Shown: positions 4,048-38,715 of the stretch, piece by piece | How the letters are laid out: each line of letters begins with the position of its first letter | Position numbering within the stretch: position 1 is the first letter of the stretch | NCBI RefSeq assembly: GCF_964188315.1 | Contig: NC_135667.1 | Location: forward strand, 26,908,001 to 26,972,000 | Length of the DNA stretch: 64,000 bases | From: Podarcis muralis | Lineage: Eukaryota | Direction of reading: 5' to 3' | Made by a program: the position numbers and the translations under genes | Notes under the pieces: model-generated | What the model saw: the letters and a program-made list of their open reading frames with translations, nothing else | The model's database searches: none | What the model was told of the DNA's origin: nothing

Positions 4048-5451
4048 TTCCAAGAAGGACATTAATTAATCAACCAATCAAGCATGAGGTTCAAAGGAGT
4101 AGAAGCTGGGAGGAACTACAGAAGGAAATATATGAGTAAGAGGAGGCACATGAACAATCTGGGAGCTGGTAAGATACAGTACAGTACAATCTTTTGCCTA
4201 GAAAAGTATGCTAAACCCATACATACACACAAACACACACACACACACACCTTACACTCCATTCTATAGTCCATTCTGCCAACACCATTTCATTCCCAAC
4301 TAATTCTTCTGCATGAGTAGGCCAGGGTTAGGGTTAGGGTCTGAATCTGTAAATTGATTCCATTGAAACATACTGCATTTTAGTGATCCCAAGGCAAGAA
4401 GCTTAGGTTTTTAGGGATGTTGTGGTTTTGGGTCTTGGTTTGGATACTGATCCTCCAGGCACTTGTCTGGATATCATCCATATGTAAAACAGAAGACAGA
4501 GACAAAGACTTCCAAGCATGCTAAAATGTTTATTTGTGAATCAAACAATGTGGGGAAAATCTCAATCTTAGTGCAAACATGCAACCATTCCATCGCTCTC
4601 ATGCGGGCAATAGTGGGCACTGCAGCTCCTCGTGAATCCACAGGTCTAAGCTGCCAGATGTGGTGAGCACGGGGTGGGTGACATCAGAAGTAGTCGAGAA
4701 GAAAAGACAGGAAGCATTTGGGATTTGCTTTGAACATTTATTGATGCAAGAGCAAAGCATATGACTACAGACACCAGGGTCAAGCAGGGGTGAGGGTAGG
4801 GGAAGAGACTTGATTCTAAGGGAAATCTAGCCTGAGAAACCAGTCAGCTGACGAGCAGGTGCTCATTGGCTGGGGCAGGAGCAAAGGGTGAAGAGCGCCC
4901 TCCACACTCTGTCTGTGTCCAGACTGTGAGTGCCCATCCACTGGCTGGTGGGCGGGGACGGGCCATGGAAGGTGCTCTTCACCCCCACACCCCACCCATG
5001 CCTAGCGCACAGGGGCCAACAATCAGTGGGTGGGAGCGGGGTGACCCCGGAGGTGAAGAACATCCTCTGCACTGACCCAGGGGACTCGTGCACCGGGCAC
5101 ATGCCTAGTTTGCACCTCCCAAGATTCTGTGCCCAGGGCCAGGGCCCCCCTTGTCATCATCCCCCCCCACACACACTAGGCCACTGACTGTGGGTCCTCA
5201 TGACTGCCCAGTGCTCCAAAGTGAAGGGAATACCAGAAGCAGCGAGGAAGATAAGAATATATTGTGGTGTGCTCTGAACAATTATTTATTGAACAGAATG
5301 GCAGAGAACTAAATAAACAACAAAAGATAACATATAACATGCAATGTTCAATCAACTAAGTCTGGGATTGGAGGAGGTACCTTGCTTATCTGGGCAATAT
5401 ATAGCCCAGGAGGCCAAGTGGCAAATATCAGGTGCCACAGCTGTTCTCCCA

Positions 5452-6058
5452 CTACCTTTCTGTCTCTACCTCATCGCCTAAGCAGGGGTTTCTGTCACCC
5501 GACTGGTTGTCATCGAAACATTTAATGCAGCCTCTGTTGCTACTGTAGCACCGGAATAGGGGGGCACCCTGGATGTGTTCCCAAGCCCCCACCACAGCCT
5601 CATGCTCTTTCACTGTATCCTTCACGTAAACAGTCTCAAAAACAAAAGCCCTGGAATCCTCACTGTATCTGTTAAAAAGGGGGTTGACCATCTGGACAAT
5701 GTTTCTCGCATCACTCTCATTAAGGCAACGTTCTACACAAGGAGATAATTTGCTAAAGAAGATCAGGCAACTATTTTGGTCTTTATTGGATAGGATCCTT
5801 TCTACAGGGCTATTCTGGCCTCCAGTCAGCAAGCGCCATTCCGCGTGCTCTTTACTACGGGTAAATCTTGGCCTAGCTGCAATGACATCTCCTATTGGCT
5901 TTGGGACATATATTCCATTCCTGTGGTCAAGAGCATTCTTCATCTGCTGCATTTTGCTCCTGGGCAAAACTGTCTCCAAGATCGTTGGTGTAGGTTCTAT
6001 GCAGCATGCATGATCCAGTCTTATAGCCACAGCATAATGGATGTTTTTAATGCCATAC
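5452..6058 (-). CDS. SNAD-like secreted AID/APOBEC-type deaminase, locus 1: intact catalytic terminal exon only
   Basis: ORF 5452-6144 contains HAEWRLL...IFFSKLSPCVERC and a C-terminal Cys cluster. Acceptor ttcctAG|G at 6059-6060 has the same phase as loci 2 and 3. AATAAA at 5290-5285. No homologue of exons 1-2 was seen between 6060 and 7470. Confidence 0.75.
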
Positions 6059-7648
6059 CTAGGAATGAGCACCAAAAAATGATGGGAATGAGTGGCACTG
6101 AATGAGCAAAAACTAACATTGAGTATTCCAAACTGAACTTTCATGTTTGGCAGCTGAATAGAAAGGCATTGTTAGAGGGAAGGATTTTTTTTTATTGGGA
6201 TGTGATGGTTGTGATGACTGATAAACAAATTCTAACTGGCATCTGCTAATATACCAGGACAGAGATGGGTTTTACAACAAAGATTCTCAAAAAATTAAGT
6301 GAGGTTTAGTTAGCGTCACGGCTGTTACTGGGCAGGAAAACAATATTGTGGTTTTTTTATTTTTTAAAAAAGTTATCCTGCAACGAGCAGATAGTCTTGC
6401 CAACAAACTATTATATGCAATATGTGTATTTTTACATCTCCATTATGTCTGGGTGTGCAGTGTGCTTCCAACAACTCTGTGAGGTAGGTTAGGCTGCAAG
6501 TTGATTCAGTTCCCAGAGCTATAAAGGTACACATGACATGCTTACAACATTATTTGTGGCATATCAGGAGTGTGGAAGCAAAAGTTGATGCCTATAGTGC
6601 AAGCACTAAAGATTGAGAACAACATTGAGAACAACAACATATGTTATTATAATAATACATTCTTTCAGCATAACCTTCCAAAATCCACACACATATTGGC
6701 ATTCCCACCACATGTGGAAATAGGAGGCAAAACAGAAGTCAAGGGTGCTTTTCTTAATATTTGCAAAACAACTGCTGGTTAGTTTATCAGTAGGGCTGAA
6801 TCAGTTGGGAAGGAGGCTTTTATGCTCACAAATGCTAATTAAGAACCCACAGGTGTGTGTATGTGTGGGCAGCCAGTTTATGTCAACAATTTCTTCCTCT
6901 GTGCCCTTGCAAGAGCTTGTGCTTATTTTATAATGACCTGTTGAGTTAAGCTAAGGGGTTTAGGGACATGCTCTGAATTCCAGATCAACCAAGCACCCCG
7001 CCAACAATAGTCCCAGGGCTCCTCTTCCTTGACCTAGTCTTTCAGATCAAGACATCACAATCAGTATCAAACTGTATTTTGGTCACAGACCAGCATAAGA
7101 TAAAACCATATTTCAATGAATGTCCATCATGGAAGCGCAGAATCTAGCAACTGAGGATATAACATCTGGATTTTCAGAGACATCGCAATGTTGCAATGAA
7201 TTCTCCTTAACTTAGGTTGCTTCTCCAGGCTGCAGCAAATTGTCCTTTGGGCTTTTAAGTTTTATGTCAGCTGTGGGCACTGGATTGTATTGTAACCTTG
7301 AATTCTCAAACACCCATGGGCATGGGCATGTTAACAGCCCCAATGTGGACACTACAGCCCCACATGACTTTGCACATCTCTTCTGTAGGCGTGGGTGATT
7401 ATTCACACTATAGGGTACAGCAGAGGAAGAAGAAGCAAACAGACAAGAAGCTTTTGTGATATGCTCCAAAGATTTTATTGATTCAACAGCAAAGCAAAGG
7501 ACTACAAAGATCATATGTAATGCTCAATCTTGAGAAAACAAGAATATGGGAATGAGGAAGGGGTGACTTTGGTTCTTAGGCCAGCTGGCAAAATGCTAAG
7601 TGCCACAACTGCAATCCCTAGGTGGCACTACTCTAGCATTGGCTTTCC

Positions 7649-10600
7649 CTAATTGGCCAAGCAGGGACTGCCGTTATCAAATTGGTCATGGTTAAAACAT
7701 TTGATGCAGGCTCTATTACCTGCATAGCACCGAAATAGTGGGGCATTCTGGATGCGTTGCCAGGCCCTCAACACAACCTTATCTTCTCTTTCTGCATCCC
7801 TTGCGTAAATGGACTCAAAAACAAAAGCCCTGGCATCTTCATTGAACCTGTTAAAAAGGGGGATGACCACCTGTACAATGTTTCTCATGCTATTCTCATT
7901 GAGACATCGGTTCACACAGGGGGATAATTTGCTAAAGAAGATCAGGCAACTATTTTGGTCCTTATTGGCTAGGATCCTTTCTACTGGGCTATTCTGGCCT
8001 CCGTTCAGTAAGCGCCATTCAGCATGCACTGCTGAATGTGTCAGAAACATTGGCCTGGCTGCAACAACATCCCCTATCAGATGTGGGTTATACATTCCAT
8101 TTGGCCGCATAATCTTCCTTTTCATCTGAATCATTTCGTGTCTAGGTAAAGCAGCCTGTAAATTCCGCCGTGTAGGATTTCTGCAGTATGTGTTATCCAG
8201 TCTTACAGCCACAGCATAATGGTTATAGGGGAGGCCAAACCTAAGAAAAACCAAAGGAAAGCTGAGAATGAGTGGTGCTGAACTATTCCAAACCAGGTTC
8301 CTCCTTTTGGCCCATGTTGGCTTGATTTTTTATTATAGTCTCAGATGCAGTCATTTGAATGGAGAGGCAGAGAAGTTCCAGTTCTACTGCAATATCTATG
8401 ATGACCTATTTATAGATAGAAGCCACAACTTAATGTTACAGCAGATAGCCAGTGGTTTTTTTGGGGGGGATGGGACGTCAATAACCCAAGATGATGGAGT
8501 TTATCATGTTAATTGGAATTAGATTTGCTAAGCAAAACCAGGAGTGCCATGAGAGCCAGACCAGTGGGTGCAGATCAGGGGTTCCATGCATCCTAGAGGG
8601 GGAATACCCTTTTCCTTTAAATACTGTGCTAGTAAAAGCACCATATTTGCTTGCAAAAGAAGAAGACTCCCAGCACATCAGCACTTTCCAGGACACCCAT
8701 ATGACTATGTGCTGCATAATCCCACGGGCGTCCCAGGAAGTGAAGCCAGACATTGTGCTGCTCTGAGTGCACAAGGTTTTTTAAAAATAAAGACCACCTC
8801 AGCTATGGCACCGCTAATGTGTTTGGGGCACACTGGCTGAGGCTTGTAGCCAGCAAGGCCTGCATAATGCCCAGTTAGTTCCTTCCCAAATCACCCTGTT
8901 TCTACTGCAGTGCCCTTTCTCCCAGAGGTAGGATGGTGGAGGAATGCGATTCAGTCCACATTTAAAGGTGAACCTACCAAATTTTCACTTTCCAAAATAG
9001 TTTGAAAACCAAAATAAGCCCCCCCCCCCCGAAATTCACACTTCTCCAAATTATGCATTGTACTTTTCGAGCAAAGTAATTTGCACAAATGACCATTGAG
9101 ATTGCTACAGCCCATTAAAGGGCAGCTTTGTTTTCATGAACTTGGGGGATAAGTGCGTTAAACAGGTTTTCTAGGAAGTGAAAAGACCTCACTGCTAAAC
9201 CCCCAATAGAAAGCAGAAAGGCAAGAAAGGGTATAGGTGTAAAACAGATGGGAAATGTTCGACTTCATTGCTATGAGAGTTTGGAGGACCTGTTCTGAAA
9301 GGAGAAGAAAATGACCATTACAACGTTAGAAGTACTATATAAATGGAAGAACCACTAACCTTTTAAAGTGCTGTGGAATTTAGGTATGCCTTCAGTGTTT
9401 ACTGTTATGTCCTACCCATATAAGAACAGATTATTTCCTTAACAAGTTCATTTTGAAGTGGATATCTAACTTAAGAGGGTGATTGGAGGAGAAAGTTAGT
9501 TCCATAGGAGGGGATTATTGTTTTTGTTTGTTATTATGGTGTACATTTTTGTGGTTTTATATTGAAACCTGCCCTGTGGTCCTTCCATGAAGGACAGAAT
9601 AGAAATTTCATTAATTAATTAATTATGCATATATTATGGTACAGTATGCATAAAAATGCATGTACATTGTAAAAATAACATTAAAATCATTGTATTAGGG
9701 GATTTTCTTTTTGCAAAAATGTGTATGTTAGGAAAAACTGCATAAAAATATGTGAATATAAATTTGCGCTAAATGCTGGTGATTTTTCTTGGAAATATGG
9801 AAAACTGAAGAGTGGAAAGATGAGAACCAGAAATAAACCTGCTCACCCATCCCTATGCAGTGCTTCCCTCTACAGGCATCTTACTGTACAAGTTTTTATG
9901 TGCCTTGCAATATTCACAGTCATAATGATATTGCCTTCCCCACATCTTCACCCTAATAGCACTTAAAGATGACAAAATGTGAAAGCACGCATGCCAGAAC
10001 AAAACCACATGGGCAGACCTTTGAAAGCAAACATATAACACACACACATTTCCCCTCTGCACAAATATACATACACAGACAGAATCTTATTCATTTATCT
10101 TAGGCCACCTTGTAGCAGCATCAGCATCAAGGGAAGCTCATAACATGAAGCAAAGCAATCTCCTCCATGTTGTATGAAATAATCAAAACGTAAATTATTA
10201 AGTGCTCGCTTCGGCAGCACATATACTAAAATGTAAATTATTATGAGTAGGAAAGCAAAATGCTTTATTTGGCCAGAATACCAACATTCTTGCTTGTTTT
10301 AGTCCCATGATTTTGTTTTGAGGGGTTTTTCGAAATGTGTTGAACACTTGCTTGGAAAGCCCCAGAAAAATCCAAAACATTACTCACTCTCTGATGTAGT
10401 CAATGATTGCCTTCAGCTTGTCTGGATCTATAGACCCAAAGGCTCCACTTGTCAAACACAGCAGGAAAGTCACACTCAACAGGCTGAAACCCAATCGACT
10501 TCTGGACACCTGTCAGAAGAAAACAAAAAGAGAGGGCACTCAGAGTAGCGTCATTGGCTAGGTGTTTCCAGCCACTCTGCTCCACCCCCTGCCTTTGGAA

Positions 10601-11336
10601 GGGTCATAGGACGCTGCTGCCTGAAAGGTGACTGTCTTTGGGAAGCTGAGAGTCCAGAAAATTGATCTAACTGGCTAGCAGTAGTGGGTGGAGACCCTGA
10701 GACTGGTAGAGGTTGCCAGAGCTAGACTGCAGAATCTAGGCAGTACCGTTCAGATAGGGGTGTAGCTGGACCATCAGCCCAAACTGATAGAAGACACTCC
10801 ATGCCAATGAGGCTTCTTATGACTCAAGTGACAAGAGTGGCTCCAGAAATACCCCAAGCTATGCATTTCCAGTTTTATACACCTACGCCTTAATTAGCTA
10901 CATGAGGGTGCAATGCAATCTGGATATAAGATATGCCTATCAGATATTTTCCCAGTTCTAAAACGATTACATTGTACTTTAATTTTATTACTGTAAATCT
11001 TGAATATTTGTCTGAATTTAATCGTCTTACATCTTGTGAGCTGTTAATTGTTTTGAGCTGATTGGAGCTCATCCTTGTTGTCAGGAAAGCAGCACATAGA
11101 TATTAAATCAAAATCCTAATGTTGTAGAATTATACTGTTGTTGTTTTCTTTTCAATGAAGTTCAATGAAGCATTATCATCATTCCTACTTGTTTTGTAAG
11201 TAGGAATGATGATAATGTCTTATTGGTATGAATGTTATATTTATTCATAACATGTATTATATGCCACAATAATAACAGAAGCTTGATAGAGGCATATCAG
11301 ATAAATTGTAACAGAGTTACTCACTGTCGGCTCCAT
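7649..11336 (-). CDS. SNAD-like secreted deaminase, locus 2 (complete, 241 aa)
   Basis: Exon 1 11336-11325 (ctaccATGGAGCCGACA|GTGAGT); exon 2 10509-10388 (VSRSRLGFSLLSVTFLLCLTSGAFG-SIDPDKLKAIIDYIR, |GTGAGT, phase 2); exon 3 8240-7649 (ttcttAG|G, HAEWRLL...SPCVNRC). Hydrophobic signal peptide present. AATAAA at 7479-7474. Confidence 0.85.
10202..10232 (+). pseudogene. Retroposed 5' fragment of U6 snRNA with 11-bp target-site duplication
   Basis: GTGCTCGCTTCGGCAGCACATATACTAAAAT is the first 31 nt of U6. Flanked by GTAAATTATTA at 10190-10200 and 10233-10243. Confidence 0.9.
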
Positions 11337-11406
11337 GGTAGGAAAGTAGCTTGTCTCCCAGCCAAAGACGGTCTTCCTCCCACTTACAGCAATAATTCAC
11401 CAGCTC

Positions 11407-11414
11407 TTTATATA
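11407..11414 (-). promoter_or_regulatory. TATA box of deaminase locus 2
   Basis: TATATAAA ~70 bp upstream of the Kozak ATG at 11336. CCAAT motifs at ~11469 and ~11523. Conserved in locus 3 (18486-18479). Confidence 0.65.
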
Positions 11415-11585
11415 GGTATTCTGTTTCTCTTAGGAAAGGTTGGATACCCCTCCTTGTATATAGAACTGCCAATCACAAAACAGAGAGGTGGTCAGGGTTT
11501 TTTTAAAAAAAAACACACCTGACCAATTACAGGAAGAAATTGTCACGAGGCAGGGAGGATCTGCAACTCTTTCTGTTCTTGGTAA

Positions 11586-11605
11586 GAGAACTGAAAGAGA
11601 AACCC
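11586..11605 (-). promoter_or_regulatory. ISRE/IRF-E-like element upstream of locus 2
   Basis: Minus strand GGTTTCTCTTTCAGTTCTC (plus strand GAAAGAGAAA at 11593-11602) matches GAAANNGAAA, ~180 bp upstream of the TATA box. Confidence 0.45.
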
Positions 11606-11865
11606 TATGGTCACATCATCCCTCTGCAACGTGTAATGACTGTGAAGGGAACCCAAATATTGTTTGCTAAGCTCTTTGGACTGCAAATACATTTGCATCA
11701 GCATTTTGGGAAGATTCTTGGTACTGAAACCAGCACCATTACAAAACAGTGCATCAGTTGCTGACTTGCCTCTCTACAGCAGTGTACTTCAGCCTTGGGT
11801 CCCTGGATGTTGCTGGACTACAACTCCCATTACCCCTAGGCTTCTTGGTCAATGGTCAGCGATTA

Positions 11866-12107
11866 CAGTGGTACCTCAGGTTATATACGCTTCAGGTTAC
11901 ATACGTTTCAGGTTACAGACTCCGCTAGCCCAGAAATAGTGCTTCAGGTTAAGAACTTTGCTTCAGAATGAGAACAGAAATTTTGCTCTGGCAGCGCGGC
12001 GGCAGCAGGAGGCCCCATTAGCTAAAGTGGTGCTTCAGGTTAAGAACAGTTTCAGGTTAAGTACGGGCCTCCGGAACAAATTAAGTACTTAACCCGAGGT
12101 ACCACTG
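11866..12107. mobile_element. Tc1/mariner-type MITE
   Basis: TA|CAGTGGTACCTC...GAGGTACCACTG|TA. Confidence 0.85.
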
Positions 12108-12139
12108 TACATCAATACCAGCAAGAAAGAAAAATGGGA

Positions 12140-12310
12140 GGCATCTAAGGAAACTAGTGTGGATGCATAAGGAGCTTTCAGATGAGCTGAGAGTTAAGAA
12201 GGGGATGTATAAGAAATGGAAGAAAGGGAAAATCACAAGGAGCCAACAGTTGCACGGGGAAGTCAGGTGATAGTTCTTTCACTTGTGCAGTAAACCACTT
12301 GATGTTTAAG
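12140..12310 (+). mobile_element. Degenerate CR1 LINE ORF2 fragment
   Basis: GAGCTGAGAGTTAAGAAGGGGATGTATAAGAAATGGAAG resembles the CR1 ORF2 'ELRxKKxMYKKWK' region. Confidence 0.4.
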
Positions 12311-13039
12311 GCATGAGATTCACATCCTCTCTTGTGTGGTTGTGTATTCCCACAACTCACGCATATGGAAGTCCTACCACAGAGATAGGGAACCTGTAGT
12401 CCTCTAGATGTTGTTAGACTACAACTTCCATAATCCCTGACCATTGGCTGTCCTGGCTGAGGCTGATAAGAGCTGTAGCCCAATGATAGTGATACAGTCA
12501 TAGGTTCCCTATGCCTGTCCTATCACATTACTTCTGTGCTCTGTACTTTGTAATGTAAAAACCTGTGCTCCTACACAAACAAGTAGAATTGGTCCGTGCA
12601 AGATTCTGCCTCAGTATCCATGCCACAATCCTGGCCTCCACTCCATCCAACCAAGGATTTCACCAAACATCCACTTGTAACCGGAAATGTTGTGGATCAG
12701 CAAAATCCCTCTCACTACTTGGCAGGATGATAGCCTGCTTACCTTATCATGATATGTACACTGTGCTAAGTTACTGTTTCTTAGGTAGTCATCTGTACTC
12801 AGCCCAGCATAAGCCTTCTTCTGCAACAATCATTCATTCACGCACTCAGTGGCATAGCTTCATGCACCTCTTCTACTGCCTGCTAGAGCCTTCTGAAGTC
12901 TCTAGCACATCTCATCATCCATACATAAAGTTCAACAAAAGATTCACATTGTATTGGGGGGGGACCCTTTTCAGCCCAAGGGTCATTGCTTTTCAGGGGT
13001 CACATCCCAGTGGTACCTATGGGTGTGGCTATAATAATA

Positions 13040-13385
13040 TAATAATAATAATTTATTATTTATACCCCGCCCATCTGGCTGAGTTTCCCCAGCCACTCTG
13101 GGCGGCTCCCAATCAGTGTTAAAAACAGTACAGCATTACATATTAAAAACTTCCCTGAACAGGGCTGCCTTAAGATGTCTTCTGAATATCAGGTAATTAT
13201 TTATCTCTTTGACATCTAATGGGAGGGCGTTCCACAGGGCGGGCGCCACTACCGAGAAGGCCCTCTGTCTGGTTCCCTGTAGCCTCACTTCTCGCAATGA
13301 GGGAACCGCCAGAAGGCCCTCGGCGCTGGATCTCAGTGTCCGGGCTGAATGATGGGGGTGGAGACGCTCCTTCAGGTATAGAGAC
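13040..13385 (-). mobile_element. L2 LINE 3' end
   Basis: ORF 13136-13420 ...RQRAFSVVAPALWNALP...[14 protein letters not shown], with an (ATA)n-like tail. Confidence 0.8.
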
Positions 13386-14821
13386 AACAGCGGGCGGAGC
13401 AATGGATGTGACTCTTCCATGCGGACAGTAAGCTACATTTCAGCCCAGCAAAAGCCAGAGGTTTCTACTTCCCACATAACATCTCTTCATCCTCTATCAA
13501 GCAAACAAGAGGCATTGTCACAGTTCAAGGAAGCACTCCAAAAAGGCCAAAGCATTTGAGAGGGGATGAAGGAGGGACTGGGTAGAGTCCCATTGGCCAA
13601 ATAGAGAGGCTTGAAGGGTCTGGGGTTCCCCATCCCTGTCTCAGGGTATTTATCTATGACAGCTGGGGTGGGGGAGGAATTTGTACATTTTTTGCACTTT
13701 CCAAAACAGTATGTGAGCCAAAGCACAGCTATCTTTTGAACTTTGTGTTTGTCCTAATTTTGTGATGCAGTTTTCCAGTCAAACAATGCTTACAAAGATT
13801 ATTAAGGAAGGTATGCATAAAAATGAAAGTCTGTGTGTGGGGGATGTAAAACACAATAGCAGTCAATTACAACATTCCTAGAGTGTACATGTTTAGACAT
13901 GGGGAGGGATGTTTGTCCAGCCAGCAGGTAAACTTCCTGTTTCCCTCTGGGCTGGGACAGACTTCCTCCGCATGTGACTAGAGGTGGGTGTGGCCTCACC
14001 TGTGCAGGTAATGATAAAAGCACAGGGCAGGGGCAGCCATCTCTCTCTCTTACTTCTCTTCCTTTGAACAAGCAACATCTACTGAGTGAAAGATGCCCTC
14101 TTGGCTCCCAGCCAAGAGAGGACAAAGGGACTATCTTCTTATAAGATAGATTCCAAATGTATGTTACTTCATTAAGCCTAAGTCTGCCTTCTGGGATCTG
14201 ATTGTGAACAGATTGTGGGTAAACTCTTTTTATCCTTTTGTAAAGGACTGTGTCGTGTCTTCTATTTTGAGAGGGAATAAGGGGAAATTACCAGAATAGT
14301 CATTACACAGGCTAAAGTGAGCCTGAGCAAATGCTGCCGTTGCAAACAAAATAAAGGGGAATGTTTTACTCTGCTGATATTGGAAACTTGTTAACACAAG
14401 TTGGATAAGGATATAATCAGACAATATATCCTCTCCTGCATTCCTGAACATTCCCACAGTGTGTTTGTGTAAAAATTGCTTGCAGCAGTGTGCGCATTTC
14501 TCAAAACTGCATATAAAAATGTGCTTATTGTGAGACATCTATACTAATATGCTGGTGAATTTTCATGAGTTTTCAAGTGTATACTTAGGCTTGTGGTGCT
14601 AATACCAGAGACAGCAAAAAACAAGAAGCTATTTTGGTAAGATCTCAATATTTATTCATTCATCAGCAAAGCAGTAAAGTATATGCATCATATACAAAGG
14701 TTAAGTTGGTTAAAGCAGCGGAAGCCTTGACTCTATTGGCAATCTACACAGGAGCCCACTTGACAATCATGTGGTCCCACAACTACCTGCCATAAGGTGC
14801 ATCATCACCATCTTTCTGGCT

Positions 14822-17800
14822 CTAATCAAGTAAGCATGGACTGTCAGCGTTTTGGTTGTTGTCAAAGCATTGAATACAGCCTCGGTTGTCATTGTAGCAC
14901 CGGAATAGGGGGGAATTCCGGATCCTTTCCCAGGCCTTCACCACAACCTCCTTCTCCTCCTGTGTGTCCCTCCGATAAACAGTCTCAAAAACAAAAGCCC
15001 TGGCATCTTCATTGTACCTGTTAAAAAGAGGGTTCACCATCTGTACAATGTTTCTCATGTCATTCTCATTGAGACATTGGTTCACACAGGGGGAGAATTT
15101 GCTAAAGAAGATCAGGCAACTATTTTGGTCCTTATTGGCTAGGATCCTTTCTACTGGGCTATTCTGGCCTCCAGTCAGTAAGCACCATTCAGCATGCACT
15201 GCTGAATTTCCCAGAAACATTGGCCTGGCTGCAACAACATCCCCTATCTGACCTGGGTTATACATTCCATTTTCCTGCATAATAGCCGTATGCATCTGAG
15301 CCATTTTGTCTGTAGGTAAAGCAGTCTCTAAATTCTGCCGTGTAGGATTTCTGCAGTATGTGTTATCCAGTCTTACAGCCACAGCATAATGGTTATAGGG
15401 GAGGCCATACCTAAGAAAAAACAAAGGAAAGCTGAGAATGAGTGATGCTGAACTATTCCAAACCAGGTTCCTCCTTTTGGCCCATGTTGGCTTGATTTTT
15501 TATTACAGTCTCAGTTGCAGTCATTTGAATGGAGAGGCAGAGAAGTTCCAGTTCTACTGCAATATCTATGATGACCTATTTATAGATAGAAGCCACAACT
15601 TAATGTTACAGCAGATAGCCAGGGGTTTTTTGGGGGGATGGGACGTCAATAACCCAAGATGATGGAGTTTATGATGTTAATTGGAATTAGATTTGCTAAG
15701 CAAAACCAGGAGTGCCATGAGAGCCAGACCAGTGGGTGCAGATCACGGGTTCCATACATCCTAGAGGGGGAATACCCTTTTCTTTTAAATACTGTGCTAG
15801 TAAAAGCACCATATTTGCTTGCAACAGAAGAAGGCTCTCAGCACATCAGCATTTTCCAGGACACCCATATGACTATGTGCTGCATAATCCCATGGGCATC
15901 CCAGGAAGTGAAGCCAGACATTGTGCTGCTCTGAGTGCACAAGGTTTTTTAAAAATAAAGACCACCTCAGCTATGGCACCGCTAATGTGTTTGGGGCACA
16001 CTGGCTGAGGCTTGTAGCCAGCAGGGTCTGCATAATGCCCAGTTAGTTCCTTCCCAAATCACCCTGTTTCTCCTGCAGTGCCCTTTCTCCCAGAGGTAGG
16101 ATGGTGGAGGAATGCGATTCAGTCCACATTTAAAGGTGAACCTACCAAATTTTCACTTTCCAAAATAGTTTGAAAACCAAAATAAGCCCCCCCCAAAAAA
16201 AAAATTCACACTTCTCCAAATTATGCAATGTACTTCTTGAGCAAGGGACGCAGGTGGCGCTGTGGGTTAAACCACAGAGCCTAGGACTTGCCGATCGGAA
16301 GGTTGGCGGTTTGAATCCCCGCGACGGGGTGAGCGCCCATTGTTCGTTCCCAGCTCCTGCAAACCTAGTGGTTCGAAAGCACATCAAAGTGCAAGTAGAT
16401 AAATAGGTACCGCTGCAGCGGAAAGGTGAACGGCCTTTCCAAAACAATTTGAAAAGCAAAATAAGCCCCCCCCCCCGAAATTCACACTTCTCCAAATTAT
16501 GCATTGTACTTTTCGAGCAAAGTAATTTGCACAAATGACCATTGACTTTGCTACAGCCCATTAAAGGACAGCTTTGTTTTCATGAACTTGGGGGATAAGT
16601 GTGTTAACAGGTTTTCTAGGAAGTGAAAAGACCTCACTGCTAAAGCCCCAATAGAAAGCAGAAAGACAAGAAAGGCTATAGGTGTAAAACCGATGGGAAA
16701 TGTTCGACTTCATTGCTATGAGAGTTTGGAGGACCTGTTCTGAAAGCAGAAGAAAATGACCATTACAACGTTAGAAGTACTATATAAATGGAAGAACCAC
16801 TAACCTTTTAAAGTGCTGTAGAACTTAGGTATGCCTTCAGTGTTTACTGTTATGTCCTACCCATATAAGAACAAATTACTTCCTTAACAAGCTCATTTGG
16901 AAATGGATATCTAACTTAAGAGGGTGATTGGAGGTGAAAGTTAGTTCCATAGGAGGGGATTATTGTTTTTGTTTGTTATTATGGTGTATATTTTTGTGTT
17001 TTTATAACCTGCCCTGTGGTCCTTGGATGAAGGACAGAATAGAAATTTCATTAATTAATTAATTAATTAATTATGCATATATTAAGGTACAGTATGCATA
17101 AAAATGCATGTACGTTGTAAAAATAACATAAAAATCATTGTCTTAGGGAGGAATTTTTTGCAAAAATGTGTATGTTAGGAAAAACTGCATAAAAACTTGT
17201 GAATATAAATTTCCACTAAATGCTGGTGATTTTTCTTGGAAATGTGGAAAACTGAAGAGTGGAAAGATGAGAACCTGAAATAAACCTGCTCACCCATCCT
17301 TATGCAGTGCTTCCCTGTACAGGCATCTCAATGTACAAGTTTTTATGTACCTTGCAATATTCACAGTCATAATGATATTGCCTTCAATTTGTTTTGAGGG
17401 GTTTTTCGAAATGTGTTGAACACTTGCTTGGAAAGCCCCAGAAAAATCCAAAACATTACTCACTCTCTGATGTAGTCAATGATTGCCTTCAAGTTGTTTG
17501 GATCTATAGACCCAAAGGCTCCACTTGTCAAACACAGCAGGAATGTCACACTCAACAGGCTGAAACCCAACCGACTTCTGGACACCTGTCAGAAGAAAAC
17601 AAAAAGAGAGGGCACTCAGAGTAGCGTCATTGGCTAGGTGTTTCCAGCCACTCTGCTCCACCCCCTGCCTTTGGAAGGGTCATAGGAAGCTGCTGCCTGA
17701 ATGGTGACTGTCTTTGGGAAGCTGAGAGTCCAGAAAATTGATCTAACTGGCAAGCAGTAGTGGGTGGAGACCCTGAGACTGGTAGAGGTTGCCAGAACTA

Positions 17801-18408
17801 GACTGCAGAAGCTAGGCTATACCGTTCAGATAGGGGTGTAGCTGGACCATCAGCCCAAACTGATAGAAGACACTCCATGCCAATGAGGCTTTTTATGACT
17901 CAAGTGACAAGAGTGGCTCCAGAAATATCCCCAAGCTATGCATTTCCAGTTTCATGCACCTACTCCTTAATTAGCTACATGAGGGTGCAATGCTATCTGG
18001 ATATAAGATATACCTATCATATATTTTCTCAGTTCTAAAACGATTACATTGTACTTTAATTTTATTACTGTCAATCTTGAATATTTGTCTTTGAATTTAA
18101 TCGTCTTACATCTTGTGAGCTGTTAATTGTTTTGAGCTGCTTGGAGCTCATCCTTGTTGTCAGGAAAGCAGCACACAGATATTAAATCAAAATCCTAATG
18201 TTGTAGAATTATACTGTTGTTGTTGTTTTCTTTTCAATGAAGCATTTTCATCATTCCTACTTGTTTTGTAAGTAGGAATGATGATAATGTCTTATTGGTA
18301 TGAATGTTATATTTATTAATAACATGTATTATATGCCACAATAATAACAGAAGCTTGATAGAGGCATATCAGATAAATTCTAACAGAGTTACTCACTGTC
18401 GGCTCCAT
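14822..18408 (-). CDS. SNAD-like secreted deaminase, locus 3 (complete, 240 aa)
   Basis: Exon 1 18408-18397; exon 2 17585-17464; exon 3 15410-14822 (HAEWCLL...SPCVNQC). All GT-AG and in phase. AATAAA at 14656-14651. Confidence 0.85.
16245..16433 (+). mobile_element. Sauria SINE 5' half inserted in intron 2 of deaminase locus 3
   Basis: GGGACGCAGGTGGCGCTGTGGGTTAAACCACAGAGCC... tRNA-like head. Absent at the homologous site in locus 2 (~9075). Confidence 0.85.
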
Positions 18409-18478
18409 GGTAGGAAAGTAGCTTGTCTCCCAGCCAAAGATGGTCTTCCTCCCACTTACAGCAATAATTCACCAGCTC

Positions 18479-18486
18479 TTTATATA
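18479..18486 (-). promoter_or_regulatory. TATA box of deaminase locus 3
   Basis: TATATAAA at the position homologous to the locus 2 TATA box. Confidence 0.65.
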
Positions 18487-18837
18487 GGTATTCTGTTTCT
18501 CTTAGGAAAGGTTGGATACCCCTCCTTGTATATAGAACTGCCAATCACAAAACAGAGAGTTGGTCAGGTTTTTTTTTAAAAAAAAACACCTGACCAATTA
18601 CAGGAAGAAATTGTCACGAGGCAGGGAGGATCTGCAACTCTTTCTGTTCTTGGTAAGAGAAATGATAGAGAAACCCTATGGTCACATCATCCCTCTGCAA
18701 CGTGTAATGACTGTGAAGGGAACCCAAATATTGTTTGCTAAGCTCTTTGGACTGCAAATACATTTGCATCAGCATTTTGGGAAGATTCTTGGTACTGAAA
18801 CCAGCACCATTACAAAACAGTGCATCAGTTGCTGACT

Positions 18838-19145
18838 AGGGGGGAATTCCGGATCCTTTCTCAGGCCCCCACCACAACCTCCTTCTGTGTGTCCTTCCCA
18901 TAAACAGTCTCAAAAACAAAAGCCCTGAAATCTTGAGGGAACCTGATAAAAAGGGGGCTGGCCATCTCCACAATCCAGTTCTCGTCTTCCTTGTTGAGAC
19001 AGTGGTCTGTACAAGGAGATAATTTGCTAAAGAATATCAGACAACCATTTTTACCCTTATTTTCCAAGATCCTTTCTACTGGACTATTCTGGCCTCCAAT
19101 CAGCAGGCGCCATTCAGCATGTTCTGTATCCTTTTTCATAGCCAT
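18838..19145 (-). pseudogene. SNAD-like deaminase, locus 4: truncated pseudogene fragment
   Basis: HAEWRLL...SPCTDHC is retained. TGG>TGA occurs at the conserved AW (stop at 18863-18861), homology breaks off at ~18838 before the FRCY/CIxC motifs, and there is an in-frame stop shortly upstream of the ORF start. Confidence 0.8.
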
Positions 19146-19459: not shown

Positions 19460-20895
19460 CAAAAAACACATACAACAAAAACCATAATAACGCTAATAAC
19501 ACAATCTGACAATTCAGATTTAAACACTGATATACCTATGACTACACCTTTTTAACAATATTTCCCCACCTCTCCTCCCCCTACTTCCCACCACTGTCTG
19601 CCTTATCACTTAAATATTCCTTCCAGGTTTCTTCATATTTATCCACTCTTAATTTGCGTTGACATGCAATTCATTCGTATGTAGCTAGTCTGTCCATATT
19701 ATCCATCCATGTGCTCAATAGAATCTTTTTGCGGCTCTTCCAATTCATCAAAACAAGTTTTTTTGCTTCTAATATGGCATGGTACATCCTTTTTTTTTTT
19801 ACCCCTTGTAATCTCCCACGTTTCCGGAATATAATTTAGAATTAAATTCAATTCCCCTAAATAACAATTTATTTTTATTACTCTTGCTATAAATGTCCTC
19901 ACCTCGCACCAAAATGATCTTATCATCGGGCAATTAATCATCATATGTACTAGTTCGCATTTTTACTCCCACATCTCCAGCAGTTGTCTGCACTTGTTAT
20001 TTTCTTCTGGTATAGTTTTGCTGGAGTCCAGTGGACTCTGAATATTATTTTCTGCTGAATAAGTCTTAGTCTTAGATCCATAGTGGCTATCTCTGTTGAT
20101 TTTATACTTGACTCCCATATATCATTTGTTATCTGTACCCCTAACTCTTCGTTTTTGTCTATCATATTCTAAATCATATTTCTTCCTGTTGAGTAGGGTT
20201 TTATATAGTGTAAGTGTAGAGCTCTTTGTTTTTGTTGCAGAGATTAAATCTTGTAGCAGCATGGGTGTTTCCGATGCTTCTAGAGCGTCAGGGCCAAACT
20301 GCCTTTCCAACATATGTTTCAATTGGATGTATTGCCATTGTGTTTCACTGGTTAATCCATACTTTACTTATATTCCACAAATTTGTAATTTTCATCAATT
20401 AATTGATTCAATGTCAAAATACCTTTTTTCATCCAATTTTGCCAAATTATTACTTGATTTCCAATTTTTAATTTTGGGTTGGCCCATATTGTTAATTTCT
20501 CCTTATTATTTTTATTTATATTCATTCAAATTTTTATAGGTGCTTTCATAGTCTCCAGGATAATAGGATATTTCATAAATTTGGAGCCGAGTTTAGTCCA
20601 CCCTACAAGAGGTTCAAAGAAACTACATTCGAGAGTAGCCCAACTGGGATTCCTGCTAGCTCTCCAATCGTTAGTCTTACTCAGCATGTAGGCCTGGTGA
20701 TATAGTTCCAGATCTGGGAGACCAAAGCCACCTTCCTTAGTTGGAAGTTGCATTTTATGTAGTGATATTTTTAGTGGCTTTGTACCCCATAGGCACGATC
20801 TAAATAGTTGATTTGTTTTTTGGAAGTAAAATTTGGGAACATGTATTGGTAATCCTCTAAGAATGTATAAAAGCTTTGGAACGACATTCATTTTG
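19460..20895 (-). mobile_element. L1-type LINE ORF2 3' part, frameshifted
   Basis: ORFs 20526-20891 (MNVVPKLLY...KEGGFGLPDLELYHQA), 19950-20165 (IIFRVHWTPAKL...CWRC) and 19699-19944. Confidence 0.85.
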
Positions 20896-22036
20896 AGGGC
20901 ATTAATCTTCTTCTTTTATAGAGCCATTCCACCTCTCTTGGGGGGGGGGAGCCTCTCCTACAGTTTCAAATTGCAAAACAGGAATGAGTTGAGTTCCTAG
21001 GAAGGATCTGAAGCACGTCACTACATGTAAAAAGAATGGTGGAACAGGAACTGTGTGATAAAACATAAAAGACAGTTGACAATCAAGGAGGGTGGCCAAT
21101 TACTAATGCAAATTCCACCAAAGAAAAGGAACTGGTATTTCTGGAGAAGTGTATAAATTGCCACGTGTCGTCTGCTTAACCTTGAGGTGATCTTTCGTTT
21201 TGTTTTTTGGCATGGAGCCTATTCATTCCATGGAAGTCAGGGAGAGTGAAAGATCCGAGGTCATGTATACAGTCAAATATTATGACAGACTCCTTCTGTA
21301 AACAGCTTTGTGGGATTTCTAAGGAAATTGTGTAAGTGGTGCTTTTCTCTTTCTTCCTCTGTCTGCACTGTGGCAACAGGGGGCAATCTGGGGGCAGAAG
21401 TTCACAGCCCCACTTAACAGAATGAGCTGGAGGTCACAAACTGCAGAAGGGCTGGGTTGTGGCATTCTCTTTCTTTTGGTGTAAAGATTTTTATTAAAGT
21501 TTTTCATAATACAGTAAGATATAGAAAACTAATGTATTTTTTTATTTTAAAAAAGCTACAAAAAGTACAAATAGAATAAGGTGTCCTCTCTTAAAGGTAG
21601 TTCTTAACGCTTGCCACCCACAGAAGGTAGTAGCCACTTTCTCCTCCTAGCCTCTCACCCTGGAAGACCAACATTTTCCTGCCTCCCATCCAGGGTCTCT
21701 CCATCAACCATCTATCACTCCTGGACCCTAATAAAAGCCCTGAGTAGAGGATGTCAGAGAAGAGAGAGAATGAAGAAAAGAGAAAAGAAAGAGGAAGAAT
21801 CAGGAAGAAGAAAGAAAAGAGAGGCAGGGGGAGAGAGAAAGAGAAAGGGAAAGGAAACAATTTAAAATTAAAAAAGGGACTTCTTATTTTCCATCTGCCG
21901 GTTGCATTAAAACAAAATGATAACATACAAATCTCCTCCACTTTCTGTTAAACAATATTTCTTTGAAGTCCAATTGTCTCAAAATCATTCATTTCCTTGT
22001 CCACAAATGAAAAGATACATTGCATCAACAGCAGTA

Positions 22037-22310
22037 CAGTGGTACCTCAGGTTAAGTACTTAATTCGTTCTGGAGATCCGTTCTTAAACTGAAACTGTTC
22101 TTAACCTGAAGCACCACTTTAGCTAATGGGGCCTCCTGCTGCTGCCGCACCGATGGAGCACGATTTCTGTTCTCATCCTGAAGCAAAGTTCTTAACCTGA
22201 AGCACTATTTCTGGGTTAGCAGAGTCTGTAACCTGAAGCGTATGTAACCTGAAGCGTATGTAACCTGAAGCGTATGTAACCTGAAGCGTATGTAACCCAA
22301 GGTACCACTG
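22037..22310. mobile_element. Tc1/mariner-type MITE with an internal 17-bp tandem expansion
   Basis: TIRs with TA flanks. GTAACCTGAAGCGTAT(G) repeated ~4 times at ~22228-22295. Confidence 0.85.
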
Positions 22311-36536: not shown

Positions 36537-36567
<31 letters not shown>

Positions 36568-38715
36568 TTGTTGTGGCAGCAGCATGGGTGCAGCCACAGG
36601 CGAGGGTGCAGTTGTGGTGGTGGACGGCATGGGTGGCACCCATGTGGGTGAGAAGGGACCCTGAATCTGCAGGGGGTGGGGTATGGCAGCATCAACAGTG
36701 GGAAGCAGCAGTGGGGAGGCATTTTGCATACAGAAGCAAAATGTTCCAGACCGCCCTTGCCAGCATAGGTGTCGGTTATATGGACTCCATTCTTAGACCA
36801 TATGCCACCAAAACTCCAAGGCATTTGTGGGACTTCCTGAGAAACTCAGCCAACTATATTGTTAATCCAGCCTAATCCAGTCAATAGAGTCTGCCCTTTT
36901 ATGGGACCTCTTCTTCCATCTCACCAAAAATACAAATGTGCCTCTGGAGATCTGGAGGCTTTCAATATTTATGCAAGCATGCATAAATATTTATGCATTA
37001 AAAAATATATATACTACAAAGTCATCAACGGAGTGTGCAATCTATGCAATTTATTTAAATGTCTAGCATAGGCTTATCAGCATAAGAGATTGTTGCCTAT
37101 GTTCTGCTGTCTATGGCTCTAGGGATGCTTCTACCATAACCAGAGCTTCAGTGCACAAATACCAACTACTGTCGACCATTGGACAACACACTGAAAAACA
37201 GCAAAAGAAAAACATACAAACAGAAAGATTCAGGAATTCTGCATAGATCTCTCCAGATGGTTTGAACACTGGATTATTATTCTGCACAGAGTTCTGTTGC
37301 CTCTCCAGACATGCTGAGATGACCAGCAAATGGCACCAGTTTATGACACAGTCTTAGCTGTGCTGAATGCTCTGCCATTCGCAGACTAAAAAGCAGCCCT
37401 GATATTCTAATTAAAGATGGTGGCAAAAAAAGGAGCTGTTGCCATCATGAACATGTGGGACTACAAATAGGAGGCTTAGAGGCGACTCTCTACCCACATA
37501 TTTTACAGGCTGCTATTTTCAGTCTTCAGTGAAAAATACTGGAATGAATGGCCAAATCTGTTGAGTCATTACATTGGAAAAATAGATCTGAGCCAGACAC
37601 ATTTGATTCCATCAATTTAAAATAGTTTCTTTACAAAAATTAGAAGGAATTCTGGTTTGCTTTATTTAAAAATAATGCTAACTAGCGCAATTCATCAGCT
37701 GAAGAGAATGATGAACTGGCCAAGACTGAATATTTCACTTTTATATACTCACCTGATTAAAGCTTTGATGCCACACGATTTGACTCGCATTAATGATTAA
37801 CTCTTTGCCTGGAGGAGCCTGAGGTTCCAGTCTTCCAACTTTCACTCTAACCACTGAACCATTGGGAAACATCAGCCAGTTTGTAACATCAAAACCTGTA
37901 ACTAATTCTCCATTTTCATCAAAATGCACAGTGTCTCCAACACTGTTGTTGAATATGGTTCTTCTTAGAAAGTAATGGACCTAGTTTGAAAAAGAATGTT
38001 AACAAGGGAATAACAGTTTCTTGAAATAATTTTAATATTTAGACCTCTTAGAAGTCTTGCCCTTTTTCAGACAGTATATTTATTCATTTTTATAAGAGTA
38101 TTAATAAATCAACAACTCATGTCCTGACCAGAGACGAATGGCTGGTGAAGATGATGGACTATGCCAAAATGGCAAAATTTACCAGGAAAATCAGAAACCA
38201 GGAAGAGAGAAACTTTAATAAGGAATGGGGGGAAATTACAAACTACCTAAGAGAACATTGTAAACAACTAAAAACTTTGGCAGGATTTGAGTAACGCTTG
38301 TAATGTACAAAAAAACTAAGGTAAAAATGGATTATTTTAAGAAAAATAGAGAAAATATATGATGCAGTTGAAAAAGATTGAAAATGGAAACCATGGAAAG
38401 GTGAAGGAAGTCTAAGGATTCAGAGAATCCTAAATGCTGATGGTTATGTCTAATGTTTCAAATTAAATGTCTAGTGTAAAACTGAATAAAAAAGATCATA
38501 AAAATAAATAAATAAATAAATCACCAACTCATAAATTCATGGCTATGCACCATAAAATTGTTAAAATATCATAACATTTTAAAATCATAAAGCACAGAAC
38601 TAATGACCAACATTTCTGTTCCGTTTCTATTTCTGGCTGTAATTTCTCTCTGTTAGATTCCAGATAATGGGGGAAATCACCATAATATTATGTGGTTTGC
38701 ACTATGTATCAAAAT

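What the first reader, a model, noticed from the sequence alone, without database searches (positions are those of the whole stretch)
5452..19145. Tandem array of secreted AID/APOBEC-like (SNAD-type) zinc deaminase genes in a lizard
Seen: four paralogous minus-strand exons carry HAEW(R/C)LL...C(L)IFFSK(L/F)SPCxxxC. Loci 1-3 also have a C-terminal FRCY...CIxC...PC cysteine cluster. The ORF track shows only the last exon. Reading upstream gives a 12-nt ATG exon and a 122-nt exon encoding a signal peptide (MEPTVSRSRLGFSLLSVTFLLCLTSGAFG|SIDP...), which splice in phase to give 240-241-aa secreted proteins. Known: HxE and PCxxC(x) are the Zn-binding/catalytic motifs of the cytidine deaminase fold, and signal-peptide-bearing members define the SNAD clades of non-eutherian vertebrates, whose substrates are largely unknown. 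Inference: an actively expanding, catalytically intact extracellular deaminase family, probably for innate defence.
Basis: partly seen in the sequence, partly recalled or inferred. Interest (0 to 1): 0.9.

Follow-up and report, generated by a model that had tools for sequence, protein, structure and literature searches.

The report
Lizard secreted SNAD1 deaminase gene array
This stretch of the common wall lizard genome holds a small tandem cluster of genes for secreted zinc cytidine-deaminase-like proteins of the already described SNAD1 family; it is a real but known kind of gene, and the notable detail is that one signal-peptide leader probably serves two alternative deaminase exons, one conserved and one fast-evolving.

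Summary
Four minus-strand exons at 5452-19145 match Pfam SNAD1 (PF18744, E 1e-47 to 3e-23).

The array is not four equal genes:
- Two units have a promoter and leader: L2 and L3.
- L1 is an intact terminal exon with no leader of its own. In P. raffonei and P. lilfordi it is annotated as spliced to the L2 leader, giving a 246-aa isoform.
- L4 is a truncated relic with a stop codon.

The catalytic H-x-E and P-C-x3-C residues, six conserved cysteines, a signal peptide and an APOBEC-like predicted fold (pLDDT 89.5; Z 8.3 to APOBEC3G) are all present.

Evolution is mosaic. Promoter, leader and introns of L2 and L3 differ by 1.4-4%, while exon 3 differs by 15.6%. L3 is an L2-type/L4-type chimera. 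L1 is under purifying selection (omega about 0.3). L2 changes faster than neutral (omega 3.0 against P. raffonei), with a hot spot at residues 68-104.

"Actively expanding" is better described as birth-and-death turnover with gene conversion. The family is known and still has no biochemistry, so this is a new member of a known kind. The RNA-seq junction test could not be run.

The parts
11325..11336 (-). L2 gene (LOC114583659) exon 1, coding part: ATG GAG CCG ACA then GT donor. A TATA-like TATATAAAG lies at 11406-11414.
10388..10509 (-). L2 exon 2 (122 nt). Encodes the signal peptide h-region and the predicted cleavage site AFG|S, plus the start of the mature protein.
7649..8240 (-). L2 terminal exon. 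Holds the whole SNAD1 deaminase domain (H117, E119, C153, C157, 4-Cys cluster) and the stop. AATAAA at 7474-7479.
5452..6058 (-). L1: intact SNAD1 terminal exon with a conserved acceptor (cctag|G) in the same phase and no leader of its own. Probably an alternative last exon of the L2 gene, giving a 246-aa isoform. RefSeq annotates it in this species as the 1-exon, 230-aa LOC114582100. AATAAA at 5285-5290.
18397..18408 (-). L3 gene (LOC144325019) exon 1, coding part
17464..17585 (-). L3 exon 2 (122 nt, signal peptide)
14822..15410 (-). L3 terminal exon (SNAD1 domain). It is a chimera: the N-part and core are L2-like and the C-part is L4-like. It carries an unusual R121C next to the catalytic Glu. 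AATAAA at 14651-14656.
18837..19139 (-). L4: relic of a fourth SNAD1 terminal exon, closest to Lacerta agilis LOC117058743. It has an in-frame stop, no N-terminal third, no Cys cluster and no leader.
7682..11766 (-). Duplicated unit A (L2 promoter to exon 3), homologous to unit B
14852..18837 (-). Duplicated unit B (L3 promoter to exon 3). Non-coding parts are 92-97% identical to unit A.

Best explanation
[quoted passage not shown] It lies between a vomeronasal V2R receptor cluster and an fn2-domain gene.

Two three-exon genes, L2 and L3, each have a TATA-like promoter, a 12-nt ATG exon and a 122-nt exon. Together these encode a cleavable signal peptide with predicted cleavage after G29. One large terminal exon encodes the whole deaminase domain.

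In the mature protein of about 212 aa, H117, C153 and C157 would hold the catalytic zinc and E119 would shuttle the proton. Conserved cysteines (C64, C143 and the C216/C223/C226/C238 cluster) would form disulfides suited to the secretory pathway.

A third intact deaminase exon, L1, sits 1.6 kb downstream of the L2 stop. It has no leader and is most probably used as an alternative last exon of the L2 gene. One promoter and signal peptide would then deliver either a conserved deaminase (L1) or a rapidly diversifying one (L2). L4 is a dead remnant.

The locus evolves by birth-and-death. Gene conversion homogenises the 5' parts. [quoted passage not shown]

Shown here: family membership, gene structures, motif integrity, predicted fold, synteny and substitution patterns.

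Inferred: secretion, zinc chemistry, cytosine deamination of pathogen nucleic acid, the immune role, and the L2-leader-to-L1 splice in this species.
For: - Family: Pfam SNAD1 E 1e-47 to 3e-23.
- Gene models: identical to RefSeq proteins, and the gene span matches the assembly's annotation.
- Conserved residues in 73 family members: E119, C153 and C157 are invariant. H117, P152, C64, C143, C216, C223, C226 and C238 are at least 90% conserved.
- Fold: the AlphaFold2 model has pLDDT 89.5 and pTM 0.84. It shows a helical insert between strand 54-60 and strand 103-106, and low confidence only in the leader. All nearest solved folds are APOBEC3, AID or CDA-type deaminases: Z 8.3, rmsd 3.8 A over 134 residues to APOBEC3G 3v4k.
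- Leader: basic n-region, h-region FSLLSVTFLLCL with Kyte-Doolittle 2.42, and A at -3 and G at -1.
- L1 as alternative exon:
  - No leader anywhere else in the window.
  - The sequence upstream of its acceptor is homologous to the L2/L3 intron.
  - It is phase-compatible: 134 + 607 nt gives 246 aa.
  - P. raffonei LOC128399648 isoforms X1 and X2 and two P. lilfordi models share one start and differ only in the terminal exon.
  - The same leader, L2-type, L1-type, fn2 order occurs in Zootoca.
  - L1 is under purifying selection: omega 0.34 against P. raffonei and 0.32 against Zootoca.
- Diversification: L2 against its P. raffonei ortholog has 27.5 non-synonymous and 2.5 synonymous changes, omega 3.0. 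Non-synonymous divergence is 5.9% against 3.5% in flanking non-coding DNA, p = 0.013. In residues 68-104 it is 16.6%, p = 4e-6.
- Conversion and chimerism.
- Literature: SNAD1 is known in reptiles with the four-Cys cluster and helical insert (PMC5889660). Fish SNAD1 genes have three exons and the protein is found in plasma (PMC11004436).
Against: - No transcript-level evidence was obtained for this species. The runs that hold exon words are only guessed to be RNA.
- RefSeq annotates L1 in P. muralis as a separate one-exon, 230-aa gene. That ATG-initiated ORF is intact in three Podarcis species.
- Fold matches are moderate (Foldseek E 5e-3, TM about 0.3; Z about 8).
- Omega > 1 rests on pairwise counts that are borderline on their own (binomial p 0.03-0.10). 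It could be inflated by conversion from unseen paralogs.
- No SNAD has any demonstrated enzymatic activity or substrate.
Confidence: 0.88

Rival explanations
1. L1 is an independent single-exon gene (RefSeq LOC114582100). It would be translated from the ATG at 6144 into a 230-aa protein with no classical signal peptide, that is an intracellular SNAD1 paralog, and not an alternative exon of L2.
For: It is annotated this way in two P. muralis RefSeq releases. The 29-codon N-terminal extension and its ATG are intact in P. muralis, P. raffonei and P. lilfordi. Zootoca models also start with short non-leader N-termini.
Against: - The extension is homologous to the 3' end of intron 2 of L2 and L3, including the polypyrimidine tract and AG acceptor.
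- Its hydrophobicity is weak (Kyte-Doolittle 1.42 against 2.42).
- The Zootoca N-termini differ from it and from each other.
- The three Podarcis species are only 1-4% diverged, so ORF retention says little.
- The six family-conserved cysteines argue for folding in the ER.
- Two other annotation pipelines join L1 to the L2 leader.
Confidence: 0.2
2. The high exon-3 divergence of L2 and L3 against near-identical introns reflects only history. Old paralogs had their 5' parts recently homogenised by gene conversion or unequal crossover. There would be no positive selection, and the genes drift under relaxed constraint.
For: - Exon-3 dS between L2 and L3 is 0.26 against 0.04 in introns.
- The 3' third of exon 3 is 25-33% divergent between paralogs but 3-5% between orthologs.
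- L3's C-part is L4-type.
- In P. raffonei the paralog introns differ by only 0.9-1.6%.
- Omega for L3 orthologs is about 1, and for several L2-type pairs it is 0.8-1.0.
Against: - Between orthologs, where paralog history cancels out, L2 non-synonymous divergence exceeds flanking non-coding divergence (p = 0.013).
- That excess is concentrated in residues 68-104 (p = 4e-6), with dS low there.
- Catalytic residues and cysteines stay invariant and the ORFs stay intact in every species examined.
- Conversion and selection are not mutually exclusive.
Confidence: 0.3
3. The proteins keep the deaminase scaffold but do not deaminate nucleic acids. They might act on free nucleosides or nucleotides or another small molecule, or serve as non-catalytic binding proteins in plasma.
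For: No SNAD activity has ever been shown (PMC11004436, PMC13402138). Structural neighbours include dCMP deaminase and RibD/Rib2 at similar Z. L3 carries an unusual R121C two residues after the catalytic Glu.
Against: The best Pfam and fold neighbours are AID/APOBEC polynucleotide deaminases. HxE and PCx3C are invariant or nearly so across 73 members. Rapid change is concentrated in regions that Krishnan et al. place at the nucleic-acid interface (PMC5889660). That is the pattern of arms-race nucleic-acid editors.
Confidence: 0.15

Closest known systems
SNAD1 clade of secreted AID/APOBEC-like deaminases (Krishnan, Iyer, Holland, Boehm and Aravind 2018, PMC5889660; Pfam PF18744)
   Same: [quoted passage not shown] The clade was reported in reptiles, is rapidly evolving, and is prone to lineage-specific expansion.
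   Different: That paper mentions reptiles and expansions in turtles and fishes, but no lacertid locus. It does not describe a shared leader with alternative whole-domain terminal exons, or the conserved-versus-diversifying cassette pair.
Fish SNAD1 genes (carp Cap31/SNAD1_810 and 12 paralogs; three zebrafish genes on chr 15; PMC11004436, PMC13402138)
   Same: They have a three-exon structure and multiple clustered paralogs. The protein is secreted (found in blood and seminal plasma), and expression is linked to immunity and stress.
   Different: They are only about 25-35% identical to the lizard proteins. No expression or protein data exist for the lizard genes.
Mammalian APOBEC3 tandem arrays
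   Same: Both are tandem clusters with birth-and-death evolution, gene conversion, chimeric genes, positive selection in substrate or antagonist-facing loops, and copy-number polymorphism. APOBEC3 is also the nearest solved fold (Z about 8).
   Different: APOBEC3s are intracellular, lack a signal peptide and the Cys cluster, and have helices 5 and 6 where SNAD1 has a hairpin. Sequence identity is about 13%.
Lamprey CDA1-like and turtle APOBEC1 isoforms, and 'mosaic' AAD transcripts (PMC5889660, section on tandem duplications and alternative splicing)
   Same: One N-terminal segment is shared by products that differ downstream. Alternative splicing or inter-paralog recombination were proposed as the source.
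   Different: Here the genomic basis is visible: a whole catalytic domain is swapped as an alternative last exon, and L3 is a germline chimera. In those cases only C-terminal tails vary, or genomes were unavailable.

Membership tests
SNAD1 (PF18744) | Significant match to the family profile above the curated cut-off, and better than to sister clades | tested here: met
   SNAD1 scores 152.7-163 bits for L1-L3 and 83 bits for L4 (cut-off 25). SNAD2 scores 31-60 bits and NAD1 is below its cut-off.
SNAD1 (PF18744) | Zn-binding and catalytic motifs HxE and PCx(n)C of the AID/APOBEC fold | tested here: met
   H117-A-E119 and P152-C153-x3-C157 are present in L1, L2 and L3, and in the L4 relic. E119, C153 and C157 are invariant and H117 is 72/73 in alignment A2.
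SNAD1 (PF18744) | N-terminal signal peptide | tested here: met
   L2 and L3 leaders read MEPTVSRSRLGFSLLSVTFLLCLTSGAFG|S: basic n-region, 12-residue h-region with Kyte-Doolittle 2.42, and A at -3 and G at -1. Model confidence is low for residues 1-30. No SignalP was available, so this is a heuristic test. L1 has a leader only if it is spliced to L2 exons 1-2.
SNAD1 (PF18744) | Helical insert between core strands 1 and 2 (specific to SNAD1 and SNAD2) | tested here: met
   The model has helices 61-65, 69-75 and 78-89 between strand 54-60 and strand 103-106, at pLDDT > 95.
SNAD1 (PF18744) | Four-Cys cluster: a Cys at the end of strand 5, CxxC in strand 6, and a last Cys in strand 7 | tested here: met
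   C216 follows strand 213-215. C223-x-x-C226 sits with a short strand at 224-225. C238 is near the C-terminus. All four are at least 93% conserved in A2. Disulfide pairing itself was not testable.
SNAD1 (PF18744) | Actual secretion and Zn-dependent deaminase activity | not testable with these tools
   This needs expression and biochemistry. It is unknown for every SNAD (PMC11004436, PMC13402138).
AID/APOBEC deaminase fold (CDA superfamily) | Structural similarity of the core to solved AID/APOBEC domains | tested here: met
   The 50 rows listed by VIA-align, like Foldseek's top 50, are all APOBEC3, APOBEC2, AID or other CDA-superfamily deaminases. The best is Z 8.3, rmsd 3.8 A and 134 aligned residues to 3v4k. 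The match is of moderate strength. There is no sequence-level PDB relative.

The most novel reading that the evidence does not exclude
A single SNAD1 transcription unit in lacertid lizards uses mutually exclusive terminal exons that each encode a complete deaminase domain behind one shared signal peptide. One cassette is conserved (L1, omega about 0.3, 93.5% identical between Podarcis and Zootoca). The other is an arms-race cassette (L2, omega up to 3, with intraspecific alleles only 82% identical). This would be a germline-encoded 'swap the enzyme, keep the address label' design. It would also be a concrete genomic explanation for the mosaic AAD transcripts that Krishnan et al. could not resolve.
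Probability: 0.6. Interest if true: 0.5.

Novelty: new member of a known kind. Interest (0 to 1): 0.35.

Why it matters
SNADs are the only predicted extracellular members of the AID/APOBEC mutator family. Eight years after their description, their substrate, activity and role are still unknown.

This compact lizard locus pairs a strongly conserved deaminase domain with a fast-evolving one, apparently behind the same promoter and signal peptide, and adds a natural chimera (L3) and a relic (L4). That gives ready-made contrasts for biochemistry: which cassette is active, on what, and what the variable helical insert recognises. It also suits tests of whether secreted deaminases are in an arms race.

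The finding does not change what is known about the family. The genes are already in RefSeq as "uncharacterized proteins" that carry the Pfam SNAD1 domain.

Tried and rejected
- RNA-seq junction test. Two run searches found contig sets, guessed to be RNA, that hold 50-67% of L2-exon words and up to 51% of L1-exon words, the latter also in other species. No splice-junction or expression evidence was obtained.
- PDB sequence search. No relative was found; the only hit was a prenyltransferase at E 0.72.
- Foldseek against PDB. Only weak rows came back (best E 5e-3, TM about 0.3), though all were deaminases. VIA-align gave Z about 8.
- Bacterial-type promoter and terminator scan of 6000-7700. It does not apply to a vertebrate and was disregarded.
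- Search for an L1 leader. tblastn with lizard SNAD1 N-termini, word size 2, E <= 10 found none in 6144-7649 or anywhere else in the window.
- Whether alternative terminal exons are general. The Anolis carolinensis locus has a single SNAD1 gene with no second domain exon called. The Pangshura protein was not on record. Lacerta agilis lacks the L1 exon at this locus. The design therefore seems restricted to part of the Lacertidae.
- 'Recent whole-gene duplication of L2/L3'. Rejected, because exon-3 dS is 0.26 against 0.04 in introns, and the 3' third follows orthology, not paralogy.
- Zn-site geometry. Model coordinates are not exposed to scripts.

Full report
**What is there**

Their alignment has an invariant block, HAEW.LL.GGQNSPVERIL.NK..N.CLIFFSK.SPC...CLN. 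The first three also carry LFRCY..NR.CI.CF...Q.....PCL.

A Pfam scan puts all four in SNAD1 (PF18744) at E = 1.4e-47, 1.7e-44, 1.2e-47 and 3.3e-23. SNAD2 is a distant second. This cannot be chance.

**Gene models**

On the minus strand the sequence reads as follows:
- a TATA-like TATATAAAG at 11414-11406;
- ATGGAGCCGACA|GTGAGT, exon 1 coding 11336-11325;
- tgacag|GTGTCC...ATCAGAGA|GTGAGT, exon 2 at 10509-10388, 122 nt;
- tcttag|GTTTGGC, the exon 3 acceptor at 8240.

The spliced CDS is 726 nt and in frame. Its 241-aa product is 100% identical to NCBI XP_077772813.1, 'uncharacterized protein LOC114583659 [Podarcis muralis]'. The gene span in assembly GCA_964188315.1 (OZ076966.1, about 26.9 Mb) matches exactly.

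The second unit has the same structure: 18408-18397, 17585-17464 and 15410-14822. It gives 240 aa, identical to XP_077772814.1 LOC144325019.

**The four loci are not equivalent**

tblastn of the spliced protein, and of other lizard SNAD1s, against the whole window finds exactly four domain exons but only two leader exons.

L4 (19139-18837):
- covers only about residues 108-210;
- has a stop after VVVGA;
- lacks the N-terminal third and the Cys cluster;
- lies directly upstream of the L3 promoter;
- has a core closest to the intact Lacerta agilis gene LOC117058743 (13% nucleotide distance against 26% to L2 and L3).
It is a relic.

L1 (6058-5452):
- is fully intact and keeps a polypyrimidine tract and cctag|G acceptor in the same phase as L2 and L3;
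- has only about 1.6 kb between it and the L2 stop, and this holds the L2 poly(A) signal at 7479 and no leader;
- is annotated in P. muralis RefSeq as a one-exon, 230-aa gene;
- has a 29-residue N-terminal extension in that model that is homologous to the 3' end of L2/L3 intron 2 and is only weakly hydrophobic.

Two other annotations join L1 to the L2 leader. In P. raffonei, NCBI annotates one gene, LOC128399648, with two isoforms that share the start. X2 (241 aa) uses the L2-type exon and X1 (246 aa) uses the L1-type exon. The independent P. lilfordi annotation has the same pair.

In the window, 134 + 607 nt also gives an in-frame 246-aa protein.

Zootoca vivipara has the same order, leader, L2-type exon, L1-type exon, fn2 gene, with no second leader. 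Its L1 exon is 93.5% identical in protein.

I conclude, at about 70%, that L1 is an alternative last exon of the L2 gene.

**Protein features**

A library-wide phmmer search found 143 cluster representatives at E <= 1e-3 among 1.84 billion. In an alignment of 73 of them plus lizard sequences:
- E119, C153 and C157 are invariant;
- H117, P152, C64, C143, C216, C223, C226 and C238 are at least 90% conserved.

The AlphaFold2 model (pLDDT 89.5, pTM 0.84) is confident from residue 31 on. It has three helices (61-65, 69-75, 78-89) inserted between strand 54-60 and strand 103-106. HAE sits at the start of helix 118-123, and PCx3C follows strand 142-150. C216 comes just after strand 213-215. These are the SNAD1/2-specific features described by Krishnan et al. 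(PMC5889660).

There is no PDB relative by sequence. By structure, all of Foldseek's top 50 rows are AID/APOBEC or other CDA-superfamily deaminases, though weak (E 5e-3). VIA-align gives Z 8.3, rmsd 3.8 A over 134 residues to the APOBEC3G catalytic domain.

The leader MEPTVSRSRLGFSLLSVTFLLCLTSGAFG|S has the n/h/c organisation and -3/-1 residues of a signal peptide (heuristic only).

Zinc geometry, disulfides, secretion and activity were not testable here.

**Evolution**

L2 and L3 differ by the following amounts:

| Region | Divergence |
|---|---|
| Promoter | 1.4% |
| Introns and exon 2 | 3-4% |
| Exon 3 | 15.6% |

Homology stops at the stop codon. Within exon 3 the divergence is patchy:

| Part of exon 3 | Divergence |
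|---|---|
| First 90 nt | 2-6% |
| 8100-8149 | 28% |
| Catalytic core | 0-4% |
| Last third | rises to 36% |

Exon-3 dS between the paralogs is 0.26, about 7 times the intron divergence. This is therefore not a young whole-gene duplicate.

Four-way comparison with P. raffonei shows that the last third follows orthology: 3-4% between orthologs and 25-28% between paralogs. Introns are as similar, or more similar, between paralogs within a species (0.9-1.6% in P. raffonei) than between orthologs (3-4%). The 5' part therefore evolves in concert.

Segment distances show that L3 is a chimera. Its N-part and core are L2-like (6%). Its C-part is L4-type: 6-7% to the L4 relic, 11% to L. agilis LOC117058743 and 33% to L2.

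Locus content varies between species:
- P. raffonei has the same layout as P. muralis.
- P. lilfordi has a relic, one leader, L2 and L1, but no L3 within 10 kb.
- L. agilis has an intact L4-type gene plus an L2-type gene and no L1.
This is birth-and-death with conversion, not simply 'active expansion'.

**Selection**

Ortholog comparisons between P. muralis and P. raffonei:

| Cassette | dN | dS | omega | Note |
|---|---|---|---|---|
| L1 | 0.008 | 0.024 | 0.34 | 3 amino-acid differences |
| L2 | 0.062 | 0.020 | 3.0 | 27.5 non-synonymous vs 2.5 synonymous changes |
| L3 | 0.055 | 0.056 | about 1 | |

Against Zootoca, L1 has omega 0.32, while L2-type pairs range from 0.8 to 1.3 at the same dS. 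Against P. lilfordi and L. agilis, the P. muralis L2 gives omega 1.8-2.0.

Flanking non-coding DNA provides a neutral yardstick of 3.5% over 3,083 sites. Measured against it:
- L2 non-synonymous divergence is higher (5.9%, p = 0.013);
- it is much higher in residues 68-104, the helical insert (16.6%, p = 4e-6);
- L1 is lower (0.8%, p = 6e-4).

A second cluster of L2 changes lies at 109-116, just before HAE.

Two caveats apply. Pairwise counting is crude, with binomial p of 0.03-0.10 for the N:S ratio alone. Conversion from unsampled paralogs could mimic clustered change.

**Comparison with what is known**

SNAD1 was defined in 2018. It was reported in amphibians, reptiles, platypus, coelacanth and ray-finned fishes, with lineage-specific expansions, high entropy in putative substrate loops and the four-Cys cluster (PMC5889660).

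Fish SNAD1 genes have three exons. The protein occurs in plasma and expression tracks immune and temperature stress. Activity and function remain unknown as of 2024 and 2026 (PMC11004436, PMC13402138).

The lizard genes meet every testable membership criterion. I found no paper describing this lacertid locus, or a shared leader with alternative whole-domain exons. The nearest statements concern alternative C-terminal splicing in lamprey AADs and unexplained 'mosaic' transcripts.

The first-stage reader of this scan had separately noted the orphan exon and the exon/intron divergence contrast on this same stretch. I tested both here and they hold.

**Verdict**

This is a real, correctly identified SNAD1 array, and a new member of a known kind. 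Its architecture and evolution add moderate interest, but it has no functional data.

Noticed in passing
window 22644-57255: The rest of the window is a cluster of vomeronasal type-2 receptor (V2R-like) gene pieces. 7TM exons lie at 22644-23543(-), 34098-35033(-) and 56320-57255(+). Large ligand-binding-domain exons lie at 26740-27732(-), 38850-39716(-) and 49710-50579(+). In P. raffonei a 7tm_3 gene flanks the SNAD array upstream and an fn2-domain gene flanks it downstream.
   Followed up: partly
L2 protein (window 7649-11336) vs P0004: The older RefSeq protein with the same gene name (LOC114583659, P. muralis, P0004) is only 82% identical to this assembly's L2. That is lower than either one's identity to P. 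raffonei L2 (86-89%). They may be very divergent alleles, a trans-species polymorphism or copy-number variation.
   Followed up: partly
window 15046-15048 region (L3 residue 121): P. muralis L3 has Cys where 50 of 73 family members, and its own P. raffonei ortholog, have Arg (HAEWC against HAEWR), two residues after the catalytic Glu. It is the only Cys at that column in the alignment.
   Followed up: partly
window 19699-20891 (-): LINE-like reverse-transcriptase C-terminal ORFs lie immediately upstream of the L4 relic. An insertion here may have removed the 5' part of L4.
   Followed up: no
window 11876-12110 vs 22034-22268: A 235-bp inverted repeat, 91% identical, lies between the L2/L3 spacer and the region next to the first V2R 7TM exon. 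It is probably an interspersed repeat.
   Followed up: no
P0022 (Logan contig, 946 nt): A public-run contig encodes an L4-like sequence (…ISIYTMGMKKDTEHAEWRLL…) that goes out of frame after CLIF. The L4 relic therefore exists, further decayed, in another individual or species, and may be transcribed.
   Followed up: no
window 36197-36875: Long CAG/CTG-type repeat ORFs (poly-Q, poly-S and poly-C runs) lie between V2R exons. This is a simple-sequence tract.
   Followed up: no
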